This document shows, piece after piece, positions 3,043-16,689 of a DNA stretch of 18,608 nt. The translations under genes were made by a program, and so were the position numbers. The notes beneath the pieces are model-generated. The model saw nothing but the letters and a program-made list of their open reading frames with translations. It was not told the origin of the DNA and ran no database searches. The DNA lies in IMG/VR virus record IMGVR_UViG_3300014911_000516, positions 1 through 18,608 of that record, one strand, 5' to 3'. Each line of letters starts with the position of its first letter. Positions within the stretch are counted from its first letter, which is position 1.

Positions 3043-3228
3043 ATGCCCAAGATTATCGAAGTTGAACTGAATGGTGAAAAGAAAAAAGGCATTCTGATAG
3101 AGAAAGTAAGACGTAGAAAACGAAAGAAAGAATATAAAGGACGTACATACGAATGGGAACAAAGGGAGATTATCGTTTACATTCCTAAAGAAATAGATTC
3201 AGAAAAATTCATTCTGATCCCATTATGA
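3043..3228 (+). CDS. Small basic beta-rich protein, possible nucleic-acid binding
   Basis: GGTGA SD; KVRRRKRKK basic patch; ATGA overlap with hjc. Confidence 0.7.
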   Translation: MPKIIEVELNGEKKKGILIEKVRRRKRKKEYKGRTYEWEQREIIVYIPKEIDSEKFILIPL

Positions 3229-3638
3229 CAAAACCTTACGATGTCGGGAGACGGTTCGAACAATACCTCGTACACCGTTTTAAGAGACTTGGATGGTTTA
3301 GTATAAGGACTCCTGCATCAGGACGTGGATGGCGTACTGGGTATACTCCTGATATTATCTGCATAAAAAACCGTAATATTCTCCTGATAGAATGTAAGGT
3401 TTTATCAGGTCCTCGAGCCTTGTATATTGAAAAGCCTAAAGTTCAGTCTTTAATAAAATTAGCTAAGCTTACTGGGGGACATGCCTATATTTGCGTCTAC
3501 TATCGTAAAGATAAGCTATACCGATTTATCGATCCTAGAGATCCCGAATACAATACGAATAAATACTATGGATGGAGTAAAACCTACGTCCTAGCTCAAG
3601 GAAAAACACTATACCAAATCATAAACCAATATTCTTAA
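3225..3638 (+). CDS. hjc: Archaeal-type Holliday junction resolvase (PD-(D/E)xK)
   Basis: GRRFE, RTPASG, PDII and LIECK match the Hjc/Hje signature; rudiviruses encode such a resolvase. Confidence 0.9.
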   Translation: MTKPYDVGRRFEQYLVHRFKRLGWFSIRTPASGRGWRTGYTPDIICIKNRNILLIECKVLSGPRALYIEKPKVQSLIKLAKLTGGHAYICVYYRKDKLYRFIDPRDPEYNTNKYYGWSKTYVLAQGKTLYQIINQYS

Positions 3639-4961: not shown

Positions 4962-5150
4962 TTATGCAATCATCCGTTTATGTCTTGGTTTTATGTAACA
5001 TAAATACCTTCTTATGAGGATGCTTACTGCTCTTCTTATTGCCTCACTTCTAGATTCGTAGCGATTTTGTTTTACTAGGTAATCTATGTCTTCTACGTAT
5101 TTTTCGGGAAGACGTAATGTGATCTTCTTATACTTCACTCTTCTCTTCAT
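4962..5150 (-). CDS. RHH (CopG/Arc/MetJ) transcriptional regulator, 62 aa
   Basis: KITLRLPEKYVEDIDYLV..YESRSEAIRRAV; TATGGTGAA SD. Confidence 0.9.
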   Translation of the reverse strand: MKRRVKYKKITLRLPEKYVEDIDYLVKQNRYESRSEAIRRAVSILIRRYLCYIKPRHKRMIA

Positions 5151-5189: not shown

Positions 5190-5378
5190 TTATGCTATCA
5201 TTTTTTCATATCCATTTCTTTGTCGCCATAACTCCCTATTAATAAGATCACGTACGGCAACCCTTATTGCTTCACTTCTTGATGGGTAAAGTTTCATTTC
5301 GACTAATTTCTCTAAGTATTCTACGTACTTTTCGGGAAGATGTACACTTACTAATCTGAGATTCGATTTCTTACTCAT
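5190..5378 (-). CDS. RHH (CopG/Arc/MetJ) transcriptional regulator, 62 aa (start corrected from 5591 to 5378)
   Basis: MSKKSNLRLVSVHLPEKYVEYLEKLVEMKLYPSRSEAIRVAVRDLI; SD TATGGTGAA before ATG 5378 and a TATA box at 5414-5421. Confidence 0.9.
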   Translation of the reverse strand: MSKKSNLRLVSVHLPEKYVEYLEKLVEMKLYPSRSEAIRVAVRDLINRELWRQRNGYEKMIA

Positions 5379-5413
5379 ATTCCTTTCACCATAGGAGAAT
5401 ATTACCCGCGTTA

Positions 5414-5426
5414 TATTTAAGCTTTT
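5414..5426 (-). promoter_or_regulatory. BRE/TATA promoter AAAAGCTTAAATA of the tandem RHH genes
   Basis: Purine-rich BRE plus TTAAATA 35 nt upstream of ATG 5378; identical 13-mer at 6175-6187. Confidence 0.7.
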
Positions 5427-5439
5427 CTCCCTAGGAAAC

Positions 5440-5455
5440 TCCCGTATATACGGGA
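5440..5455. promoter_or_regulatory. Perfect 16-bp palindrome TCCCGTATATACGGGA, candidate operator
   Basis: Self-complementary; lies in the divergent intergenic region between the RHH pair and the wHTH gene. Confidence 0.6.
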
Positions 5456-5536
5456 TGAATAGTCGATATCTTCTTTGTATTATCCTCCAAAGGAGAACAC
5501 CATAAACATATATTAAGGAAGCATTCAAAATAAAGT

Positions 5537-5833
5537 ATGATGTCAGCAGACATAAAGTATTCTGATATAGAAAGACTTGTAGACTATGCAATTAAACAGA
5601 TGATACGTGAAGCACGTGGAACCTGTATAATGGTATATCCAAAAAAGATAGCAAAACGAGCTGGATTAAGTACAAAACCAGTAATACTATCCCTTATAGA
5701 CTACCGTTTACAAATGCTTAAAGAGAAAGGATTAATCAAGTTCTGGAAGCGTTCTGGTCATGCAAAGAAGTATATTATCCCAAATACGAGTCCATTATGG
5801 AAAGAAGCTAAAGGTGAAGGTGGTAAAACATGA
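5537..5833 (+). CDS. Winged helix-turn-helix DNA-binding protein
   Basis: YPKKIAKRAGLS...LQMLKEKGLIKFWKRSGHAKKYII fits HTH plus beta-wing; as recalled, resembles a small Thermoprotei family ending in SPLW. Confidence 0.7.
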   Translation: MMSADIKYSDIERLVDYAIKQMIREARGTCIMVYPKKIAKRAGLSTKPVILSLIDYRLQMLKEKGLIKFWKRSGHAKKYIIPNTSPLWKEAKGEGGKT

Positions 5834-6730: not shown

Positions 6731-7462
6731 ATGTGTATGTCTATGTTGTCTCAAAGTCTTAAAATTGAAGAGGTAGACTACACCGAAGACTACGACTGGC
6801 TAATTATCCTCGATGCTTGTCGCTATGACTATTTTGTAAAGTTATGGAAAATAGGGAAAATCGAACCGCGATTATCGCTAGGATCATGCACCTTGGAAGT
6901 ATTATCTAAAATATCCAGAATACCTCATAGCGTATGCCTAACTGGGCATCCATTCGTATTGTCATTCAGAGAAAAATTCGATAAGGTGATAGATGCGGGA
7001 TTTGATTATACGCTAGGCACTTGTCCACCTTGGTATATGCTGACGGCGTTTAATCTTTTCTATAATAAAATGAAACCGTATAAACGGAAGATCCTATGGT
7101 TTCTGCAACCGCATCATCCTCTCTTATCTAATCCTACATTACTGATTAAAATATTCGAGGATGAGGAAGGGAAACGAATGACGCCACAGGAAAAGGTAAC
7201 GAAAGCCTATCAGGAAGCATATAGAAAAGGGATATTATCGAAGGCCTACCGAAGCAATCTAGCGTTAGTGCTTGATTATGTATCAGAGATAATAAAGAAA
7301 GTAGATGGAATTGTCGTGATTACATCCGATCATGGAGAAGGATTAGGAGAGCCATTACGCCCAGAGGATAAACCAGTATTCAGTCATCCATGTGGGCGTG
7401 AAGAGTGGGAGCTACGTTTAATTCCTTGGTGTGTTATAGATACTAGTGAATTATGGTGGTGA
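6731..7462 (+). CDS. Alkaline phosphatase/sulfatase-superfamily hydrolase or transferase
   Basis: LIILDACRYD, SLGSCT (Thr nucleophile position), QPHHP, VITSDHGE, SHP, IPW. Confidence 0.85.
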   Translation: MCMSMLSQSLKIEEVDYTEDYDWLIILDACRYDYFVKLWKIGKIEPRLSLGSCTLEVLSKISRIPHSVCLTGHPFVLSFREKFDKVIDAGFDYTLGTCPPWYMLTAFNLFYNKMKPYKRKILWFLQPHHPLLSNPTLLIKIFEDEEGKRMTPQEKVTKAYQEAYRKGILSKAYRSNLALVLDYVSEIIKKVDGIVVITSDHGEGLGEPLRPEDKPVFSHPCGREEWELRLIPWCVIDTSELWW

Positions 7463-8352
7463 ACGTGGGAGAGATATTAACATCCTATGATGGTTTTAAG
7501 TTTTATGTAGAAAAGGAATATCATAAAGATCCGTTACGTTATGATGAACGCACAGTTCTTACAGTACTTGTAATGTTAGGAAAAAGAGATCGTATATTCG
7601 TAGATGTAGGGGCAGGAGTAGGAAGATACACAGTAAGAATGTCAAAGTGGTATGAGCTCGTATATGCAATTGAGCCCTTACCAGAACATGTAAGAATCCT
7701 TAAGAAAAATCTAGAGCTAAATAATGTAGATAATGTCATAGTAATACCCTATGCAGCCTACGATAAAAGCACTACACTACCGATATACTTAGGAGGCTTG
7801 TCATCATCTACCGTTAGGAGACATGATATGAAAGACTATATTATAGTAAAAGCAGAAAGATTAGATAAGCTAGTACATAAAGCAGATGTTATAAAAATCG
7901 ATGTAGAGGGAGCTGAATTCGAGGTAGTTAAAGGAGCTGAAAAACTACTAAAGTCAGATAAACCATTCTTAGTAATAGAACATCACGATTTTAGACCCGA
8001 CTGGAAAGAGAAACTTAAGGGAACATTCCAGAAAGTCTTTAACTACCTATCTTCACTAGGTTATGTCCCACTATTTACTACATACGTACATCGATGCTGG
8101 ATACATAAAGATAGGCTAAATGATTTATCAGATGAAGCTTTACATTATCTTCTCTGGAGACATTGGGCTAACGTATGTTACTTTAACTTAAAGCTTGGAC
8201 GTGATTGGTACTATGGTTTACCTCTCACTTGGTGGTGGGGCTATGACTTTATAGAGTTTCTCGAAGAGTTACCTATACATATACTTGAGGAAAAAGAATG
8301 GAGCGATCCACAACATATATTAAGGATCTCAAAGGAAGTAATGGTGATATAA
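7453..8352 (+). CDS. FkbM-family SAM-dependent methyltransferase with a Trp-rich C-terminal extension
   Basis: FVDVGAGVG, YAIEP, RLD, IKIDVEGAEFEVVKGA, PFLVIEHH. Confidence 0.9.
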   Translation: MVVNVGEILTSYDGFKFYVEKEYHKDPLRYDERTVLTVLVMLGKRDRIFVDVGAGVGRYTVRMSKWYELVYAIEPLPEHVRILKKNLELNNVDNVIVIPYAAYDKSTTLPIYLGGLSSSTVRRHDMKDYIIVKAERLDKLVHKADVIKIDVEGAEFEVVKGAEKLLKSDKPFLVIEHHDFRPDWKEKLKGTFQKVFNYLSSLGYVPLFTTYVHRCWIHKDRLNDLSDEALHYLLWRHWANVCYFNLKLGRDWYYGLPLTWWWGYDFIEFLEELPIHILEEKEWSDPQHILRISKEVMVI

Positions 8353-9529: not shown

Positions 9530-9684
9530 CTTCTACCCCCTCATATTTAGTTAGAGTTTACATCACATTATAATAGACTGTTATAGGAGTATATATACAC
9601 TATTCAATATTTTTTTGTATTAATATTTTTACACCATTTCTTAAAACTTGATTTCTTTCTTTCGTTACTCGAGGCGATGGGGAT

Positions 9685-10056
9685 ATGCCTGGTGTTAAAG
9701 ACTTAAGAGAGCGAGTAGATAAGTACATAGCTAAGACACCAGCCGATCAAACTGGTACAAGATACGGGGCTGTTAAGGACTTGGCTGTAGGAAGGTTTAC
9801 AGCGTATGCTTCAAGCATAGTAGAATTCAGAGAACTAGTAAGGAATGTACTAAATAAAGAAGGCGTTCCAGCCGGACAACAGGGAGTTTACTTTGCATTT
9901 GCTATGAGGCTTCGTAGTAAGGCCTTCAGCCACTCTGGTACTACTCTCAAGGATTACGTGAATGGTATGATACAGGACTTCACCACAGGTAAGGGAGCTG
10001 ATCCCACCATACTGAAGAAAATAGCATCCATGATATTAGGAGAGGTGATAAGCTAA
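9685..10056 (+). CDS. Major capsid protein 1, SIRV2 fold
   Basis: VRNVLNKEGVPAGQQGVYFAFA..SGTTL..NG..ADPTILKKI aligns with recalled SIRV2 P134 (VSAVLTQYGITGPNRAIYQGFG..SGPAL..NG..ANPQVLDAV); basic N-terminal helix. Confidence 0.9.
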   Translation: MPGVKDLRERVDKYIAKTPADQTGTRYGAVKDLAVGRFTAYASSIVEFRELVRNVLNKEGVPAGQQGVYFAFAMRLRSKAFSHSGTTLKDYVNGMIQDFTTGKGADPTILKKIASMILGEVIS

Positions 10057-10072
10057 AGGAGGTGAGTGAGAG

Positions 10073-10447
10073 ATGCCCGGAGTTAAAAGATTTGGTGATA
10101 TGAGAGAGAAATACGAGCTAAAATACGATGGTGCAAACGTAACTGCTAGGTTAACGGCCGTAGAGGAGATAAAGAACAGAAGGTATGAAGCATTCTCTTC
10201 ACCAATCGTCAACATAATCGAAACTGTTAGGACGATACTCGAGAGTAATGGCGTCCCAGCTGGTCAGCATGGTATCTACTATGCCTTTGCTGAAGTGATT
10301 CAAAAATACACCTTCAGCCACTCTGGTGCTACCTTAGACTTACTAATATCTGGAAAGAAGAGTGAATGGGTAACTGCCCACAAGGCCGATCCAGCAATCC
10401 TCGACAAGATTGTATTAGCTATAATAGGAGCATTACCACCTTATTAG
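10073..10447 (+). CDS. Major capsid protein 2, SIRV2 fold
   Basis: Gapless paralog of MCP1 (49/123 identities, hand count); SGATLDLLISGKKSEWVTAHKADPAILDKIV matches the rudiviral MCP C-terminus; GGAGGTGA SD. Confidence 0.92.
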   Translation: MPGVKRFGDMREKYELKYDGANVTARLTAVEEIKNRRYEAFSSPIVNIIETVRTILESNGVPAGQHGIYYAFAEVIQKYTFSHSGATLDLLISGKKSEWVTAHKADPAILDKIVLAIIGALPPY

Positions 10448-10499
10448 AGTCCTTAGCTTCACAATATACAGTACTGTAAGCGTACTTAATCACATTCAC

Positions 10500-10531
10500 T
10501 TTTTTTACTTTTTTCTTTTCTTTCTTTTTTT
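10500..10531 (+). terminator. Long oligo(T) terminator of the MCP operon
   Basis: About 30 nt of almost pure T, ~50 nt after the MCP2 stop. Confidence 0.7.
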
Positions 10532-10581
10532 ACACGTAACATATTCTAGTAGGGAGAACTTCTTTTCACTAGGGAGAATAT

Positions 10582-11628
10582 ATGAGTACTGTAATTGTTA
10601 CATCTCATCGATCTACATCTTTGCAAAAAGTGAGTAATGACATTAAAACGGCATTAGAGAGTAATGGAAGAGAAGTAAAGAATATTCTAGGATTTCCAAG
10701 TGTAAGAAGTTCTGATTATGCAAATTGCAGAAACGTGCTCTTCGTAATGACGTTCGATACTATCTGGGCTAGGCCTTACTTCTGTGCTTACTACTTACTA
10801 AAATCAGATGGATGGAACACAATATTCTACACTACTATCGAGGGAAAACCACTAAGATTCCTAGGAGATGAATGGATATATCGTGAATGTGAGTTCATAG
10901 CTAATTCGAATTATACTAAAAAGAAAATCGCTAAAGAAGGTGGTAGGGTTTTAGACGTAATTCATCATGGAATAGATACCCGTAAATACAGGAATTTAAA
11001 GTTTATGGGTAGAATAATGCGAAGTGAACTAGGTGCTTCAGAAAAGGAATTCATCGTTCTTTATATTGCTGGGGGGTATCGAAGAAAAGGACATGATTTA
11101 TTCAGATCTGTCATCCAGTACGTAGGAAAGAAGGATAATACAATTAAATTTGTAGTAGTGACACAGCCTAATGCAATTCAATATTATGCAGATCTAGAGA
11201 ATTGCATTGTTTCAGATGAATTTGGAAATTTACCAGAAGAAAAGATAATAGGATTATTCCATGCATGTGATCTCTATGCTCAGCCCTCTCTAAGCGAGGG
11301 ATTTGGATTACCAGTCTTGGAAGCACTAGCTTGTGGAAAGGTAGTAGTACATCCAGATTATGAGCCTCTCTCAGAGATAACTACAAAGTCTACAAGCTAT
11401 CGATGTAAGGTAGCTACTGTTTCAGAATGGAGTGGTGAGCGAGAAGAACATACTGGAATCATATATGAATTACACCTTTACGATCCAAATGAGTTTGGTG
11501 ATCTCATCATACAAGCTAAAGATGAATTAATGAAAGAGAGAAAAGAAAAGGAGAGATTATGTCTAAATCGTGCTAAACAATTCGATATGCATAAAACATA
11601 TAAGAAGTTCTTAAAGTATATCCAGTAG
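10582..11628 (+). CDS. GT4 (GT-B fold) glycosyltransferase, like SIRV ORF335
   Basis: RKG, PSLSEGFGLPVLEA (EX7E), FYTTxxGxP, NS, HGI, EFG; directly follows the MCP as in rudiviruses. Confidence 0.93.
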   Translation: MSTVIVTSHRSTSLQKVSNDIKTALESNGREVKNILGFPSVRSSDYANCRNVLFVMTFDTIWARPYFCAYYLLKSDGWNTIFYTTIEGKPLRFLGDEWIYRECEFIANSNYTKKKIAKEGGRVLDVIHHGIDTRKYRNLKFMGRIMRSELGASEKEFIVLYIAGGYRRKGHDLFRSVIQYVGKKDNTIKFVVVTQPNAIQYYADLENCIVSDEFGNLPEEKIIGLFHACDLYAQPSLSEGFGLPVLEALACGKVVVHPDYEPLSEITTKSTSYRCKVATVSEWSGEREEHTGIIYELHLYDPNEFGDLIIQAKDELMKERKEKERLCLNRAKQFDMHKTYKKFLKYIQ

Positions 11629-11640
11629 GAGGTAGGTATT

Positions 11641-12045
11641 ATGGATGAGACTATACAAAAAGAAGAGAAAAAGGAAACTACTACTCCTTCCACCACCCCC
11701 CAAAATGTAACACAGCCTACGCCACCAGCCACACCTACATCAATCTATAGAAAACCCGAATATCAACTTCAGCCACCTACACAGCTTACACCACCTACTC
11801 CTCCACAGCCTGTTAGGAGAGAACTTACGGAAGAAGAGAAAGCATTCTTAGATGCATTAGGATCTGTAGTTTCTTCGGCACAGGAACTATCATACGTACT
11901 GGCCTCAATTGATCCCGATTTGCTTCAGAAATATTCTGATCTACGGGAATTGTTCGAGAGCGCTAGGAATGTTGTACGCTCTGTATATCGATTTCATAAA
12001 CTAATTAAGGAGAGATCCAGGGGGAGTACCAGGGGGAGTAGCTGA
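11641..12045 (+). CDS. Protein with P/T/Q-rich disordered N-terminus and helical hairpin C-terminus
   Basis: GGAGGT SD; low-complexity residues ~13-57. Confidence 0.8.
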   Translation: MDETIQKEEKKETTTPSTTPQNVTQPTPPATPTSIYRKPEYQLQPPTQLTPPTPPQPVRRELTEEEKAFLDALGSVVSSAQELSYVLASIDPDLLQKYSDLRELFESARNVVRSVYRFHKLIKERSRGSTRGSS

Positions 12046-12320
12046 TGGAAAATAGGGTAGTTATTTACATAACTCCATATACTTTTTATTATAAAGGATG
12101 TAAGGTAACCATTTGGGGAGCTAAACGTTTTGATCTCCCTACTGGTGAGAGAAGTTATCTTCTCTCACTTGAAGTAGAATGGAGAGGGTATAGATCTAGA
12201 CAATTTATACTAGAGGTTTCTGATAACCAAGACTTCAAGAACAAACTTGATCTGGAAATCGCTAGGATGAAGTTAGCAATTCTTACGGGAAATCTTTCTC
12301 CCTTTGTGAAAGTGCGTTAG
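12045..12320 (+). CDS. Hypothetical beta-sheet plus helix protein
   Basis: TGATG overlap with the upstream gene; GGGGAG SD. Confidence 0.75.
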   Translation: MENRVVIYITPYTFYYKGCKVTIWGAKRFDLPTGERSYLLSLEVEWRGYRSRQFILEVSDNQDFKNKLDLEIARMKLAILTGNLSPFVKVR

Positions 12321-12360
12321 GCGAATATAATATATATCGGTTTTATACTATATCAAATAG

Positions 12361-15300
12361 GTGAATATGGATTATCGGGAGAAATTAGAGTTTGAGAATG
12401 TAGATATAGCAGATGTAGAATACTTAATGAAAATGCTTTCAGTAGTTAGTGATAACTCTCTTGACTACCCTATTATGGATGAGATTGATATTACAAAACT
12501 GGATCTAGACGCTCTAGTAGTGTCGGAGTTTGGTATTACGGATATCATAGGACAAATATCCTCATGGTTATATGAAAAGCTTCAAGCATTCTCATCGTGG
12601 ATAACATCAGGAATTGAAACGATAGTTAACGCATTATGGGAGAACTTCATAAAACCAGCTATTAACGTTATAGATGCTGGTGTAGGATGGATTAAAGATC
12701 AGGTATATTCAATATGGGATAGACTACAGAATATTGGTGATATATTAAGTTCCATAGGAGGTACTATAGTTGATATCTTCAATACAGTAAAGGAAGGATT
12801 CATAAATCTAATAAAGGAAATACCATCTGCTGTAGGAAGATTCATAAATAGTGTGAAGGATCTTATAATATCAAAGATTGAAGCGATTCCAGATCTAATC
12901 ATTAATGGAGTGCGATCGTTTATTGATGCTATTTCTTCGGGGATTGACTTTTTGAAGGAAGGATTGCAGAATGTTACAAACTTCCTAGGAAACATAGGAA
13001 TGGCACTATCCAACATATTCTCATCGATAAAAGAAGGTTTTAGTGTACTTAAGGGATATATTGAAGGAGCATTAGCAACATTCAGTAGTAAGATTGCTGG
13101 TGCTATTGATACTGTAAGAACAGCATTTATGGAATCTATGCAAACTGTAGCTACATGGATACAACAGGCATCAGGAGCGATACAAGGCTTCGTAAATGGA
13201 ATATTAAAACTTCCAGAATGGTTTAGGGAGCATTTAGTAGCACCATTAACTGAGGCTATGTCGAAATTCGCCTCATGGATATGGGAGCATCTACCAGAGG
13301 GTATAAGGTCATTCTTTGAGAAGGTAAGAGATGCTATAATAGGATTTTATGAAGGATTTAAGTCATTTATTGCTGATCCTAAGGGATGGTTTATCAGAAA
13401 TGTATGGGAGCCTCTGAAAGAGCGATTAAGGGATATTGGAGAATGGATTTGGGAAAGACTTCCTGAAGGAGTAAAAACATTCTTCGAAAGAGCGAAGGAA
13501 TTCTTTACAGTTGATTTGGTAAACTTCTTTACCAAAACATTACCTGAAAAGATACGCGATCTAGTGGACACTATTAAAACAATTCCTGAAAAGATTAAAG
13601 AGATTCCAGATAAAATAAAGGAGATGGCCGATAATGTAGCAAATCTTCCTGAAATGATAAAGAGTGCTTTTGAAAAGATAGGTGAATGGATTTGGGAAAA
13701 ATTACCAGAAAATATACGTAATTTCATAGATAAAGCTAGAGACTTCATCACAGATGTCTATGATCAGTTTAAGGAGTTCATCAAAGATCCAAAGGGAAAG
13801 TTTTACGATGTACTGAAAGGCGTAGGTGAAAAGATATTAGCAGGTTTGGGTTGGATTTGGGATAAAGTCTTGGATATAGTAACATTCATTAAAGCTAAAG
13901 TAATCGAGGCCTGTAAGACAATATCAACATGGATCTATAGTATTGCAAAAACAATAAGTGAGACGTTTAAGAAGATGTTTATTGAAACATTTATAGTTCC
14001 AATCAAAAACGTAAAATCTACATTCGTAGAACTACTTAAAACAGCTTTTGACGAGGCATTCGCACAAGAGGAAGGCGGTGAATTATGGTTATTATCATCA
14101 TTAATCCCAGAGATCTATAACGTAATGTATCCTATAATAATTATTCCAGTACTCGCTAAAGGCGTGGCTGAAGCTACGGGAGAGCAAGAAGTTTCGGGTA
14201 AGATAGCCGGTCTTGGTGGGGCGATTAAAGTTAAGCTAGGTAAACTGATTGGCGAAGTAGCTGATACGTTAAAAGACTTGGTTTCAAGGACTATAGATGA
14301 GATTGCATTAGGACTTTCATTTAATCTATTCGAGCCTTTACGGTACGCTGTAAGGCCTTTATCGAAACGTCTACTTACACCTATATTTATGAAACAATAC
14401 GGTATAGATGCCTTCTTTGAGGTGCCTTCGTTTAGTGAACTTAGGAAGTTGCTACAAAGGTACTATCCAACTACTAAGGATGAAAAGGAAGATTTTGAAA
14501 AAATGCGGAAATACTTTAGGACAATGCTAGAAATAAGAGGATTACCACAGTCATATATAAATGAAGTAATGAAGACGCTCGAGGAATGGTCTATTGAAAT
14601 CGAAGATCGCTTTACCGAATATACCAAAGTAAAGCGTAAAATCCCGCTTTCGCCACTTTACGAAATGCCTTCGATATCTGAAGTATGTACATTTATGGTA
14701 CGTGATATAATTAAAAAGCCTGAAGATTTCATAAAATGGTTAAATAAGCTTGGCGTCAGTCGTGATATAGCACTATTCAATTATCTATTACACTATCGCT
14801 ATCCTTCTCCTGAGAAAATAGCCGATTTCGTATGGCGAGGTATAGCAGGAGTATTATGGAATCCTGATGCGTCCATGGATACCGAGGTAATGAGCGCTTT
14901 CGAACTTAAGCCTGAAAAGATGAAAGCAGTTGCTCCCAGACAACTCAATTTCGAAGGAAAGACATTATTCGAGATGCTTAAACATTATATGAAGTGGCAT
15001 GATTATGCAAGATTTCCTTGGGCGGCCGGTTGGCCTACCGATAACGCTATCATCACAGATCTCCTAGCTGACATACCCGGCAAAATCGATTTGAGATGGA
15101 TGACCCGATGGGGTATATTCGAATATTGGAGTGCTAAGAAAATTGGATTAGAAACTTCTTTAGAAGAGATTATGCAAAAGTTGCTTCCACCACAAGGTGA
15201 GACTAAAGCCGATGATGTAATACAGTATTTGTATAAACAGCTTACAGAGCCTACTCCACTCTTCGATATCCGGCAATTCTGTAGGACATTACAGGCTACA

Positions 15301-16689
15301 GGATTGCATCCATACTGGATTCCTTGGGTAGGAATTGCAGAATCGATAAATGCTCTTACAGAAGAGAGGACGTTACTAAGAACTGGATTTATGAATCTCT
15401 TTGAAAAAGGCCTATTCAGTTTGAATACATTAAATCAACTATTGGCAGGATTCTTCACAATTAAATTTAAGGTAGGATATTATGACGTGAAGGATTATAA
15501 ATGGAAGTATTCAGATGTAGAAGTACCAGTTGCGTTCCTACCAGCAGAGAGCAAATTACTTGAGCTACGATCGATATTTGATAGGATGTTAGAATTATAC
15601 GCAGAGATATATTCTGAGATCAGGAAATCAATACGTTATGGAATATATGATGTAAAAAGCGCTAAGAAGATATTGCAGAAGATGATCACAGATCTAGCTA
15701 CTTATGGTAGTGGGTTAATAAAAAGCGTTACTGGAAGAAAGTTAACTCCAGAAATCGATGCGGGATACATAGATATATGGACAAACATTGAATCACAAAT
15801 ACAGGATATCGAAAAGAAGATAGCAATACGTAGTGTAGCACAAGGTGTATTAGGGTGGTTATTATACAGGTTAGCTTATGGGTGGGTAACTGAGGAAGAT
15901 TTCAGATCTGTAGTAAACATACTTACAAGCAAATTCTACGTATACAAAGAGTTAGGAGATGCCGTAGTAGAACTAGGTAAGAAGTTAGCCGAAATAATGA
16001 GGAAGCAAGAGCGTGAAGTTTATGTACCTACGCCTTCACAGATTGCGACATTTTCAGAATACATGGATATTCCTGATAATGTGATTAAGGAAGCTTTCAA
16101 GGAGAGGAATATTGTAGAGCCTTGGGCCTCATTCTGGTATAAATACATAACTACTAGAGCTATATCCAGCGAGACCAATACATTAGTGTCTACATTTAGG
16201 AGAATCGTAGAATACTTCGCCGTTCCTAAGGACTTAGTAGATAGTGTAAAGGATCTAATGGTTAAAGGTGGCTGGACCTCCAAAGAAATGCCTATATTCG
16301 ATCTAGATCTCCAGTTACGTAGATTCTACAGGATAATGAGGACGTTTGTGCCTACCATACGTGGTTTCGTAACTGATGCGATGTATATGGATGATTGGGA
16401 GAGCAAGTTGCAAGATTGGCTCACGATACGAGGAATTGACCCAAAGAAATACGAGAAACAGGTGAACTACTATAAGCACTTGATAAAAGCTAGGAAGGCG
16501 TATCGTAGATTCAGCTGGTATCTGACTAGGCTACTAAACGCTTACTGTGCTGGAGTAATTAATGAAACACAAGTAAGACAAAAATTACAAAGATTCAAAC
16601 CTTATGGATTGTCAGATGAAGAGATTGAAATAATAATTGATGGATTCAGAATGGAGAAAGCATATCGTGAAGCAATATATGGATCTTAA
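12361..16689 (+). CDS. Large minor virion/terminal-fibre protein, like SIRV2 ORF1070
   Basis: Long amphipathic helical N-terminal region, then EQEVSGKIAGLGGAIKVKLGKL (recalled ORF1070 EVEIDLAPVGLGGKIPIKFGEI), EP, PSF and RGLP; repeated P[ST] helix-start motifs. Start uncertain (GTG 12361 or ATG 12367). Confidence 0.8.
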   Translation: MNMDYREKLEFENVDIADVEYLMKMLSVVSDNSLDYPIMDEIDITKLDLDALVVSEFGITDIIGQISSWLYEKLQAFSSWITSGIETIVNALWENFIKPAINVIDAGVGWIKDQVYSIWDRLQNIGDILSSIGGTIVDIFNTVKEGFINLIKEIPSAVGRFINSVKDLIISKIEAIPDLIINGVRSFIDAISSGIDFLKEGLQNVTNFLGNIGMALSNIFSSIKEGFSVLKGYIEGALATFSSKIAGAIDTVRTAFMESMQTVATWIQQASGAIQGFVNGILKLPEWFREHLVAPLTEAMSKFASWIWEHLPEGIRSFFEKVRDAIIGFYEGFKSFIADPKGWFIRNVWEPLKERLRDIGEWIWERLPEGVKTFFERAKEFFTVDLVNFFTKTLPEKIRDLVDTIKTIPEKIKEIPDKIKEMADNVANLPEMIKSAFEKIGEWIWEKLPENIRNFIDKARDFITDVYDQFKEFIKDPKGKFYDVLKGVGEKILAGLGWIWDKVLDIVTFIKAKVIEACKTISTWIYSIAKTISETFKKMFIETFIVPIKNVKSTFVELLKTAFDEAFAQEEGGELWLLSSLIPEIYNVMYPIIIIPVLAKGVAEATGEQEVSGKIAGLGGAIKVKLGKLIGEVADTLKDLVSRTIDEIALGLSFNLFEPLRYAVRPLSKRLLTPIFMKQYGIDAFFEVPSFSELRKLLQRYYPTTKDEKEDFEKMRKYFRTMLEIRGLPQSYINEVMKTLEEWSIEIEDRFTEYTKVKRKIPLSPLYEMPSISEVCTFMVRDIIKKPEDFIKWLNKLGVSRDIALFNYLLHYRYPSPEKIADFVWRGIAGVLWNPDASMDTEVMSAFELKPEKMKAVAPRQLNFEGKTLFEMLKHYMKWHDYARFPWAAGWPTDNAIITDLLADIPGKIDLRWMTRWGIFEYWSAKKIGLETSLEEIMQKLLPPQGETKADDVIQYLYKQLTEPTPLFDIRQFCRTLQATGLHPYWIPWVGIAESINALTEERTLLRTGFMNLFEKGLFSLNTLNQLLAGFFTIKFKVGYYDVKDYKWKYSDVEVPVAFLPAESKLLELRSIFDRMLELYAEIYSEIRKSIRYGIYDVKSAKKILQKMITDLATYGSGLIKSVTGRKLTPEIDAGYIDIWTNIESQIQDIEKKIAIRSVAQGVLGWLLYRLAYGWVTEEDFRSVVNILTSKFYVYKELGDAVVELGKKLAEIMRKQEREVYVPTPSQIATFSEYMDIPDNVIKEAFKERNIVEPWASFWYKYITTRAISSETNTLVSTFRRIVEYFAVPKDLVDSVKDLMVKGGWTSKEMPIFDLDLQLRRFYRIMRTFVPTIRGFVTDAMYMDDWESKLQDWLTIRGIDPKKYEKQVNYYKHLIKARKAYRRFSWYLTRLLNAYCAGVINETQVRQKLQRFKPYGLSDEEIEIIIDGFRMEKAYREAIYGS

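What the first reader, a model, noticed from the sequence alone, without database searches (positions are those of the whole stretch)
9685..10447. Unusually similar MCP paralogs: possible snapshot of the homodimer-to-heterodimer transition
Seen: the two MCPs align without gaps at 49/123 identities (~40%, hand count). Both start MPGVK, share GVPAGQxGxYxAFA, FSHSGxTL and ADPxILxKI, and share an identical 17-nt stretch (9923-9939 and 10311-10327). Established: the MCP pairs of AFV1, SIFV and PFV are highly divergent in sequence. Inference: a relatively recent, independent duplication of a rudivirus-type MCP, or gene conversion between the copies.
Basis: partly seen in the sequence, partly recalled or inferred. 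Interest (0 to 1): 0.75.

Follow-up and report, generated by a model that had tools for sequence, protein, structure and literature searches.

The report
Conserved tandem rudivirus-type capsid gene pair
A rod-shaped archaeal virus from Guaymas Basin hydrothermal sediment carries two adjacent, 41%-identical copies of the rudivirus-type capsid gene; the pair is old and conserved across a whole group of uncultured viruses, not a fresh duplication, and similar pairs are already in the literature.

Summary
ORFs 9685-10056 (MCP-A, 123 aa) and 10073-10447 (MCP-B, 124 aa) align without gaps at 49/119 identities (E 1e-30) and share an in-register 17-nt run. Both are full-length SIRV2/SSRV1-type capsid proteins by Pfam PF12193, AlphaFold2 and Foldseek.

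The "recent duplication or gene conversion" reading fails. The same A-then-B operon occurs in at least 12 distinct metagenomic lineages from Guaymas, Pescadero, Yellowstone and Great Boiling Spring, with GC from 36 to 62%. A and B fall into separate orthologous clades, and sisterhood of the window's copies is rejected (AU p 4e-56). A-B identity within a genome (39.0%) equals that between genomes (38.5%). Both copies evolve under strong purifying selection (dN/dS 0.04-0.10) and co-diverge (r 0.94).

The duplication does look independent of the AFV1 one: the two AFV1 MCPs are sisters of each other and belong to a different Pfam family. "Unusually similar" is overstated, since the AFV1 pair is 39% identical over 92 residues.

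The most likely function is a co-expressed A/B heterodimer coating A-form DNA. This is inferred, not shown. The main rival is that only MCP-B builds the virion, as in SSRV1. Tandem SIRV2-like MCP pairs next to a glycosyltransferase were already reported in 2023-2026 papers, so this is a new member of a known kind.

The parts
9530..9684 (+). AT-rich intergenic region upstream of MCP-A. It probably holds the archaeal promoter of the MCP operon, since the genes on its left are divergently oriented.
   Evidence: Read directly from the sequence and the ORF map. The promoter is an inference. The bacterial-type scan is not informative for archaea.
9685..10056 (+). MCP-A, the upstream paralogue (123 aa). 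It is a full-length SIRV2-type capsid protein with a basic N-terminal arm and no C-terminal ..PPY tail.
   Evidence: PF12193 37.8 bits against a cut-off of 25.2. AF2 pLDDT 83.8 with helices 7-17, 20-59, 63-82, 85-103 and 107-118. Foldseek to SIRV2 3j9x gives E 1e-4, TM 0.65. It belongs to the upstream (U) clade of 29 rows. dN/dS is 0.04-0.10.
10057..10072 (+). 16-nt spacer carrying a GGAGGTGA Shine-Dalgarno-like motif, which implies a bicistronic operon.
   Evidence: A 12-16-nt spacer with a GGTGA-type motif is conserved in 10 of 12 related loci; the other two have a 1-nt spacer.
10073..10447 (+). MCP-B, the downstream paralogue (124 aa). It is a full-length SIRV2-type capsid protein with a conserved C-terminal ..PPY tail and lies next to the glycosyltransferase gene, like the single MCP of rudiviruses.
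   Evidence: PF12193 45.2 bits. AF2 pLDDT 81.1 with the same helix pattern as MCP-A. Foldseek to 3j9x gives E 5.5e-5, TM 0.70. It belongs to the downstream (D) clade of 39 rows, support 99/92. dN/dS is 0.035-0.10.
9923..9939 (+). First copy of the identical 17-nt run (xFSHSG codons).
10311..10327 (+). Second copy of the identical 17-nt run.
10497..10535 (+). T-rich tract after MCP-B, which looks like an archaeal terminator.
   Evidence: Read directly from the sequence. Its function is an inference.
10582..11628 (+). GT1-family glycosyltransferase, syntenic with the glycosyltransferase that follows the MCP gene in rudiviruses.
   Evidence: PF00534 E 2e-17; phrog_2170 E 7.5e-36. Synteny is seen in SSRV1, ARV1, SBRV1 and SIRV3 and in the related loci.
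12361..16689 (+). Large (1442 aa) coiled-coil-rich protein, a putative minor structural or terminal-fibre protein.
   Evidence: phrog_7334 E 7e-28 plus many coiled-coil hits to tape-measure families. Large proteins occupy the same position in L002, L022 and L023. The role is inferred.

Best explanation
The window is part of the linear dsDNA genome of an uncultured rod-shaped archaeal virus (realm Adnaviria, Ligamenvirales-like gene set) from Guaymas Basin hydrothermal sediment.

Its two capsid genes are old paralogues made by one tandem duplication of a rudivirus-type MCP. The duplication happened at or before the base of a widespread metagenomic clade. Since then the two copies have been kept as distinct orthologous lineages. 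MCP-A, the upstream copy, lost the C-terminal aromatic tail. MCP-B, the downstream copy next to the glycosyltransferase, keeps the ancestral tail.

The two genes are transcribed as one operon and translated from adjacent ribosome-binding sites. Both proteins keep the basic N-terminal arm and the helical C-terminal domain.

The most likely mechanism (inferred, not shown) is that one A and one B subunit form a pseudo-symmetric heterodimer. It would wrap A-form DNA in the same way as the SIRV2 homodimer or the AFV1 heterodimer. On this reading, heterodimeric capsomers arose here independently of those in Ungulaviridae and Lipothrixviridae.
For: Shown:
- Paralogy: 41% identity, E 1e-30.
- Both copies are PF12193. 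Both have the same five-helix AF2 model, and the best fold matches are SIRV2 and SSRV1 over the full length.
- The A-then-B order, followed directly by a glycosyltransferase gene wherever the contig extends far enough (L023 and L024 are exceptions), occurs in 12 distinct loci from several hydrothermal and hot-spring sites, with GC from 0.36 to 0.62.
- The two clades are separate: D 99/92 and U 83/96. Their internal branching mirrors each other, and U-U versus D-D distances correlate at r = 0.94.
- Sisterhood of the window's two copies is rejected (AU p 3.7e-56).
- Within-genome A-B identity is 39.0%, against 38.5% between genomes.
- dN/dS is 0.04-0.10 for both copies in pairs where dS is below about 2.5.
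- Nineteen positions, including basic K13, K17, R37 and R53 in the N-terminal arm, are conserved in both paralogues. There are 10-11 K/R in the first 58 residues of each.
- A conserved 12-16-nt spacer carries a GGTGA-type motif.
- The AFV1 MCPs are sisters of each other and belong to PF21660.

Inferred: incorporation of both copies into the virion and a 1:1 heterodimer.
Against: - No tool here could model or measure A:B against A:A or B:B complexes.
- There is a direct precedent for a second, upstream MCP paralogue that PMC10541130 says is not incorporated into rudivirus virions. SSRV1 gp10 and ARV2 gp14 are such upstream paralogues. The SSRV1 virion structure 6wq0 is listed in the search outputs with one MCP chain.
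- Only two positions are strictly conserved-but-different between A and B, so specialisation at the sequence level is modest.
- The root of the MCP tree is not resolved. With AFV1 as outgroup the root falls inside the B clade. I regard that as a long-branch artefact, but it means 'duplication after the split from Rudiviridae' rests on parsimony, not on a supported root.
Confidence: 0.6

Rival explanations
1. Only MCP-B, the copy next to the glycosyltransferase that keeps the ancestral C-terminal tail, builds the virion as a homodimer, as in rudiviruses. MCP-A would be a conserved non-virion paralogue, for example an intracellular DNA-coating, assembly-chaperone or regulatory protein.
For: SSRV1 and ARV2 carry a PF12193 paralogue directly upstream of the MCP. 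PMC10541130 states that in rudiviruses the second paralogue is not incorporated into virions. The preprint 10.1101/2025.08.23.671958 proposes the same for tandem copies in Demeterviridae. MCP-B shares the C-terminal aromatic tail and the glycosyltransferase adjacency with single-copy MCPs; MCP-A does not.
Against: Unlike SSRV1 gp10, which lacks the first ~43 profile positions, MCP-A is full length. It keeps the basic N-terminal arm and the conserved K13/K17/R37/R53. It evolves as slowly as MCP-B (mean p-distance 0.47 against 0.44; dN/dS 0.04-0.10). It is the first cistron of a tightly coupled operon.
Confidence: 0.27
2. One reading: a relatively recent duplication in this genome, or gene conversion keeping the copies similar.
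For: 41% identity over the full length and a 17-nt identical run. One relative, L022, has a more similar pair: 52.9% aa, 62% nt, and a 28-nt identical run.
Against: AU p is 3.7e-56 against sisterhood. Orthologous A and B clades are seen in 12 loci. There is no within-genome excess of similarity. Synonymous sites are scrambled: 21 of 49 identical-residue codons are identical. The codons of the FSHSG motif are conserved across the whole clade.
Confidence: 0.02
3. The pair descends from the same ancient duplication that gave MCP1 and MCP2 of Ungulaviridae, Lipothrixviridae and Tristromaviridae. Single-MCP rudiviruses would then be secondary losses.
For: With AFV1 as outgroup, Rudiviridae and the single-copy lineages group with the A clade, away from most B copies (98/92). 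Foldseek shows a weak reciprocal preference: A matches ORF132 better (E 0.07 against 0.33) and B matches ORF140 better (0.019 against 0.3).
Against: AFV1 ORF132 and ORF140 are sisters (95/91) and 39% identical to each other. Both belong to PF21660, whereas A and B both belong to PF12193. At sequence level both A and B hit ORF132 and neither hits ORF140. Gene order is opposite: in AFV1, ORF140 is upstream. A root inside the B crown contradicts the mirrored A and B subtrees.
Confidence: 0.08

Closest known systems
Rudiviridae major capsid protein (SIRV2 P134, PDB 3j9x; SSRV1 gp11, PDB 6wq0)
   Same: Same Pfam family, PF12193. Same five-helix fold with full-length structural alignment, TM 0.62-0.70. 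The MCP gene is followed by a GT1 glycosyltransferase. The accompanying Hjc resolvase, SAM methyltransferase and large structural protein match.
   Different: Sequence identity is only 21-25%. There are two full-length copies instead of one. The proteins are 10 residues shorter. The source is marine hydrothermal sediment rather than acidic hot springs with Sulfolobales.
Hoswirudivirus second coat paralogue (SSRV1 gp10, ARV2 gp14)
   Same: A PF12193 paralogue directly upstream of the MCP, on the same strand.
   Different: gp10 is N-terminally truncated (108 aa, profile positions 44-129). It is only 22% identical to gp11 over 74 residues. It nests within Rudiviridae in the tree, so it is a separate duplication. 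It is reported as not incorporated into virions (PMC10541130).
AFV1 (Captovirus, Ungulaviridae) MCP1/MCP2, ORF132 and ORF140 (PDB 5w7g)
   Same: Adjacent paralogous MCP genes of similar size and of comparable mutual similarity (39% over 92 aa). Glycosyltransferase nearby. Known from cryo-EM (5w7g) to form a heterodimer on A-form DNA; this last point is my own knowledge plus the PDB titles.
   Different: Different Pfam family, PF21660. Independent duplication. The AFV1 virion is enveloped; envelope status here is unknown.
[quoted passage not shown]
   Same: Metagenomic rod-shaped viruses from the same kinds of sites (Yellowstone, Great Boiling Spring, Guaymas) with two adjacent SIRV2-like MCP copies next to a glycosyltransferase.
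   Different: I could not obtain their sequences. The window's UViG id is not in the stored parts of their supplement. Whether the window's clade is one of these families is therefore open. Their listed genomes have GC 46-51%, against 36% here.
Chiyouvirus ('Chiyouviridae', Bathyarchaeia host; PMC10541130) and PBV300 (Ahmunviridae; PMC9894754)
   Same: Sediment or hydrothermal adnaviruses with two MCP homologues and a P1070-like large protein.
   Different: The two Chiyouvirus MCP genes are not adjacent (genes 14 and 23). The PBV300 MCPs are described as divergent. Neither genome was available in the collections.

Membership tests
SIRV2-type MCP (Pfam PF12193 Sulf_coat_C; Adnaviria capsid fold) | Profile match above the curated threshold | tested here: met
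   MCP-A scores 37.8 bits and MCP-B 45.2 bits against a cut-off of 25.2.
SIRV2-type MCP (Pfam PF12193 Sulf_coat_C; Adnaviria capsid fold) | Fold: N-terminal extended helices plus a C-terminal helical bundle | tested here: met
   AF2 pLDDT is 83.8 and 81.1, with five helices in each model. The top Foldseek hits are 3j9x and 6wq0, probability 1.00, 123-127 aligned columns.
SIRV2-type MCP (Pfam PF12193 Sulf_coat_C; Adnaviria capsid fold) | Dimers wrap dsDNA and hold it in A-form | not testable with these tools
   Only indirect evidence: basic N-terminal arms with conserved K13, K17, R37 and R53 in both copies.
Rudiviridae (family) | A single MCP forming homodimers | tested here: not met
   Two full-length MCP genes, both under purifying selection. 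Stoichiometry in the virion is untested.
Rudiviridae (family) | MCP groups within the rudivirus clade, with close sequence relationship | tested here: not met
   The six rudivirus MCPs form their own clade (96/99), separate from all 84 metagenomic rows. The best tblastn identity is 22-25%.
Rudiviridae (family) | Core gene set (Hjc resolvase, SAM methyltransferase, GT1 next to MCP, large terminal protein) | tested here: met
   The window is only 18.6 kb of a genome of about 35 kb.
Ungulaviridae/Lipothrixviridae MCP1-MCP2 pair | Membership of PF21660 (MCP_C) or PF25654 (MCP1_SIFV) | tested here: not met
   PF21660 scores 18.1 and 17.4 bits against a cut-off of 27. The AFV1 and SIFV proteins score 153-421 bits.
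Ungulaviridae/Lipothrixviridae MCP1-MCP2 pair | One copy orthologous to MCP1 and the other to MCP2 | tested here: not met
   AFV1 ORF132 and ORF140 are sisters (95/91). Searches give no consistent reciprocal matching.
Ungulaviridae/Lipothrixviridae MCP1-MCP2 pair | Heterodimer in the virion; lipid envelope | not testable with these tools
   No multimer modelling or virion data were available.
Hoswirudivirus-type accessory coat paralogue | N-terminally truncated upstream paralogue lacking the DNA-wrapping arm | tested here: not met
   MCP-A covers profile positions 20-127 and aligns from residue 1 with MCP-B. SSRV1 gp10 covers positions 44-129 only.

The most novel reading that the evidence does not exclude
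This clade records a second, independent origin of a heterodimeric capsomer within Adnaviria, starting from a rudivirus-type homodimer. Both subunits are still full length, near-symmetric and 39-53% identical. The least diverged pair is in L022 (Guaymas Southern Trench). If so, it would be the best natural series for reconstructing how a homodimeric DNA-wrapping capsid protein becomes an obligate heterodimer, and recombinant proteins would make this testable.
Probability: 0.45. Interest if true: 0.6.

Novelty: new member of a known kind. Interest (0 to 1): 0.4.

Why it matters
Filamentous archaeal viruses fall into homodimer (rudivirus) and heterodimer (lipothrixvirus, ungulavirus, tristromavirus) capsid types. 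How one became the other is inferred only from very divergent end points.

A clade in which two full-length rudivirus-type paralogues have been co-inherited and kept under equal constraint across hosts spanning 36-62% GC is a good candidate for an intermediate. It also argues against the published suggestion that one tandem copy is inactive.

The practical gain is modest. The arrangement is already described in metagenomic surveys, no member is cultured, and the key question (are both copies in the virion?) remains open.

Tried and rejected
- The search for related loci with the mixed alignments A1 and A3 failed because no stretch was conserved enough. I used a degenerate DNA pattern for GVPAGQxGxYxAF instead. 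That pattern biases sampling towards copies that keep the motif.
- Megablast and tblastn against INPHARED found no close relative.
- PFV1 (KU307456) and PBV300 (OP413840) are not in the collections. Tristromavirus and ahmunvirus MCPs are therefore missing from the trees.
- The bacterial promoter and terminator scan is not meaningful for an archaeal virus and was ignored.
- Rooting with AFV1 put the root inside the MCP-B crown. I rejected this as long-branch attraction, because the AFV1 branches exceed 3.5 substitutions per site and the result conflicts with the mirrored A and B subtrees.
- The polyubiquitin hits are a short chance resemblance to the GVPAGQQ segment.
- I tried to tie the window or its relatives to Demeterviridae or Gaiaviridae through IMG/VR ids in the preprint's supplement. 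No id matched.
- The genome-contig scan returned only a viral contig misbinned in a Thermotogae MAG, so it gave no host information.

Full report
**Origin of the window.** The window is IMG/VR contig IMGVR_UViG_3300014911_000516, also Ga0180301_10001477. Metagenome 3300014911 is Guaymas Basin subseafloor hydrothermal sediment, core 4569-2, 12-15 cm (PMC6478937; supplement of bioRxiv 10.1101/2025.08.23.671958). GC is 33-40%. The gene set is that of a Ligamenvirales-like rod-shaped archaeal virus:
- an RNase-H-like nuclease (365-1090);
- a transglutaminase-like protein (1528-2247);
- an Hjc resolvase (3225-3638);
- RHH regulators;
- an FkbM-type methyltransferase (7453-8352);
- a GT1 glycosyltransferase (10582-11628);
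- a 1442-aa coiled-coil protein matching phrog_7334.

No close relative exists in the INPHARED phage and archaeal-virus collection.

**The observation.** ORFs 9685-10056 and 10073-10447 encode proteins of 123 and 124 aa. They align without gaps at 49/119 identities, E 1e-30. The 17-nt identical run is at the stated coordinates.

**What the proteins are.**
- Both pass the Pfam threshold for PF12193, the rudivirus coat family. Both fall below threshold for PF21660, the AFV1/SIFV-type coat family.
- By sequence they hit SSRV1 (6wq0), SIRV2 (3j9x) and, more weakly, AFV1 ORF132.
- AlphaFold2 models built on clade-specific alignments (A2, A3) have pLDDT 83.8 and 81.1. Both show the same helices: 7-17, 20-59, 63-82, 85-103 and 107-118.
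- Foldseek ranks SIRV2 and SSRV1 first for both, over 123-127 columns with TM 0.62-0.70. The AFV1 ORF132 and ORF140 crystal structures follow.
- Both copies have 10-11 Lys/Arg in the first 58 residues.

**Is the duplication recent?** No.
- Searches of 5.8 and 1.8 billion proteins found about 70 homologues.
- Wherever context could be fetched for members of the two main clades, an upstream copy (U, like MCP-A) of 118-123 aa is followed by a downstream copy (D, like MCP-B) of 122-126 aa. This holds for the window, L002/3/4, L006/9, L007, L011, L012, L015, L017, L022, L023, L024 and L038-41.
- The sources include several Guaymas cores, Pescadero Basin (L043), Washburn Spring in Yellowstone, and a site at the coordinates of Great Boiling Spring. 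Contig GC ranges from 0.36 to 0.62.
- In an IQ-TREE analysis of 90 sequences, the D copies form a clade of 39 rows (99/92) and the U copies a clade of 29 rows (83/96). winA and winB each sit deep inside their own clade.
- Forcing winA and winB together costs 219 log-likelihood units (AU p 3.7e-56).
- The U and D subtrees have the same internal groupings. U-U and D-D distances over 55 genome pairs correlate at r = 0.94.

**Gene conversion?** Not in the window.
- U-D amino-acid identity within a genome averages 39.0%, against 38.5% between genomes. For the window it is 39.8%, against 33-47%.
- Of the 49 codons that encode identical residues in A and B, only 21 are identical codons.
- The 17-nt run has a resampling probability of about 0.012. 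It lies on the FSHSG motif, where TTC-AGC-CAC is used by nearly all U and D copies in all genomes.
- L002 and L011 show 16-nt runs at other motifs.
- Only L022 stands out, with 52.9% aa identity, 62% nt identity and a 28-nt run. Both L022 copies are also closer to all other copies, which suggests slow evolution rather than conversion.

**Are both copies functional?**
- Pairwise Nei-Gojobori dN/dS is 0.040-0.100 for U and 0.035-0.093 for D (win-L015, L002-L012, L002-L017, L012-L017).
- Mean p-distances are similar: 0.47 for U and 0.44 for D.
- Nineteen positions are conserved in both paralogues, including K13, K17, R37 and R53 in the N-terminal arm.
- Each paralogue also has its own signature. 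U has FTAKTxPDxxGxRY and ends at ..LIxG. D has KYxLKYDGANVTARLTAV and ends ..G..VPPY.
- The C-terminal aromatic tail is shared by D copies, single-copy metagenomic MCPs and rudivirus MCPs (..TGYVS), but not by U copies. D therefore looks like the conservative copy and U the derived one.
- The U stop and D start are 12-16 nt apart with a GGTGA-type ribosome-binding motif in 10 of 12 loci, and 1 nt apart in the other two. In the window an AT-rich region precedes A and a T-rich tract follows B. I read this as a bicistronic operon. That is an inference.

**Relation to known two-MCP viruses.**
- AFV1 ORF132 and ORF140 are 39% identical over 92 residues (E 8e-21). The premise that known pairs are highly divergent therefore fails for AFV1.
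- The SIFV pair shows no BLASTP similarity.
- Both AFV1 proteins belong to PF21660. The two SIFV proteins belong to PF21660 and PF25654.
- In a 49-sequence tree the two AFV1 proteins are sisters (95/91). The AFV1 and window duplications are therefore separate events, unless AFV1 underwent conversion.
- Unrooted, the tree has three groups: U, D, and Rudiviridae plus single-copy metagenomic lineages (L025, L026, L034). Single-copy status is firm for L026 and L034. L025 is a 1.2-kb contig whose downstream ORF is cut.
- Rooted on Rudiviridae, U and D lie together in the metagenomic clade, but the backbone between them and the single-copy lineages is unresolved. Rooted on the very long AFV1 branch, the root falls inside D. 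That contradicts the mirrored subtrees, and I treat it as an artefact.
- The statement 'one duplication after the split from rudiviruses' therefore rests on parsimony, not on a supported root.

**Precedents.**
- SSRV1 and ARV2 (Hoswirudivirus) carry a 107-108-aa PF12193 paralogue just upstream of the MCP. It lacks the N-terminal arm and nests within Rudiviridae.
- PMC10541130 states that in rudiviruses the second paralogue is not incorporated into virions. It leaves open whether both Chiyouvirus MCPs are structural.
- bioRxiv 10.1101/2025.08.23.671958 reports tandem SIRV2-like copies next to a glycosyltransferase in Caldarchaeales-associated rod viruses. It suggests that one copy may be inactive.
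- PMC13700489 reports a hot-spring rod-like virus with two MCP homologues and infers a heterodimer.

The kind of feature is therefore known. What this analysis adds is the following: in the window's clade both copies are full length, equally constrained and co-diverging, and the duplication is old.

**Verdict.** The most likely mechanism is a co-expressed A/B heterodimer on A-form DNA (about 0.6). The main rival is a B-only homodimeric virion with A as a non-virion paralogue (about 0.27). Novelty: a new member of a known kind. Interest is moderate.

Noticed in passing
L022:5278-7638: The glycosyltransferase next to the MCP pair in this Guaymas relative is 786 aa and carries intein and LAGLIDADG homing-endonuclease Pfam hits. 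This would be an intein inside a viral GT1 gene.
   Followed up: no
L020:50-772 and L021:118-840 (protein P0055): A 240-aa protein has an MCP-B-like N-terminal half (PF12193) and a C-terminal extension of about 120 aa. It is followed by a Laminin_G_3 protein. It resembles the 'MCP plus jelly-roll' minor proteins mentioned in PMC13700489.
   Followed up: partly
L022:4415-5164: This is the least diverged pair of the clade: 52.9% aa, 62% nt, a 28-nt identical run, and 42 of 63 identical-residue codons identical. It reflects either slow evolution or some concerted evolution.
   Followed up: partly
L006 (IMGVR_UViG_3300028891_000026) vs L009 (Ga0180300_10049268): A contig from a metagenome labelled Yap Trench seawater is 99.9% identical over 1785 nt to a contig of the Ga01803xx series that includes the window's Guaymas metagenome. 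This suggests cross-sample carry-over or mislabelling.
   Followed up: partly
L037 (QNAP01000147.1) = L013: A 4.8-kb contig carrying the MCP pair is deposited inside a 'Thermotogae bacterium' MAG from Guaymas. It is 100% identical to the metagenome contig, so a viral contig was misbinned.
   Followed up: yes
L028:2075-2401 (SSRV1 gp10), L029:2063-2386 (ARV2 gp14): Hoswirudiviruses have an N-terminally truncated PF12193 paralogue directly upstream of the MCP. It is 22% identical to the MCP over 74 residues.
   Followed up: yes
L023:9620-10369 and 10846-13107: In this relative the MCP operon is inverted relative to the glycosyltransferase and large-protein block. A 753-aa primase-polymerase (LigD_Prim-Pol) gene lies next to it.
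   Followed up: no
L026:4001-4375, L034:4001-4372: Related metagenomic rod viruses have a single MCP that keeps the C-terminal aromatic tail. L026 is followed directly by a glycosyltransferase, as in rudiviruses. P0062 (L026) is about 40% identical to rudivirus MCPs.
   Followed up: partly
window 12361-16689: The 1442-aa ORF has strong positive GC skew and many coiled-coil matches to phage tape-measure families, plus phrog_7334 (E 7e-28). Size varies widely among relatives (1442 aa here, 1671 to 2077 aa in the three relatives with a complete gene).
   Followed up: partly
window 4962-5150 and 5190-5591 (- strand): Two RHH (CopG-type) regulators lie on the minus strand in the block left of the MCP operon.
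   Followed up: no
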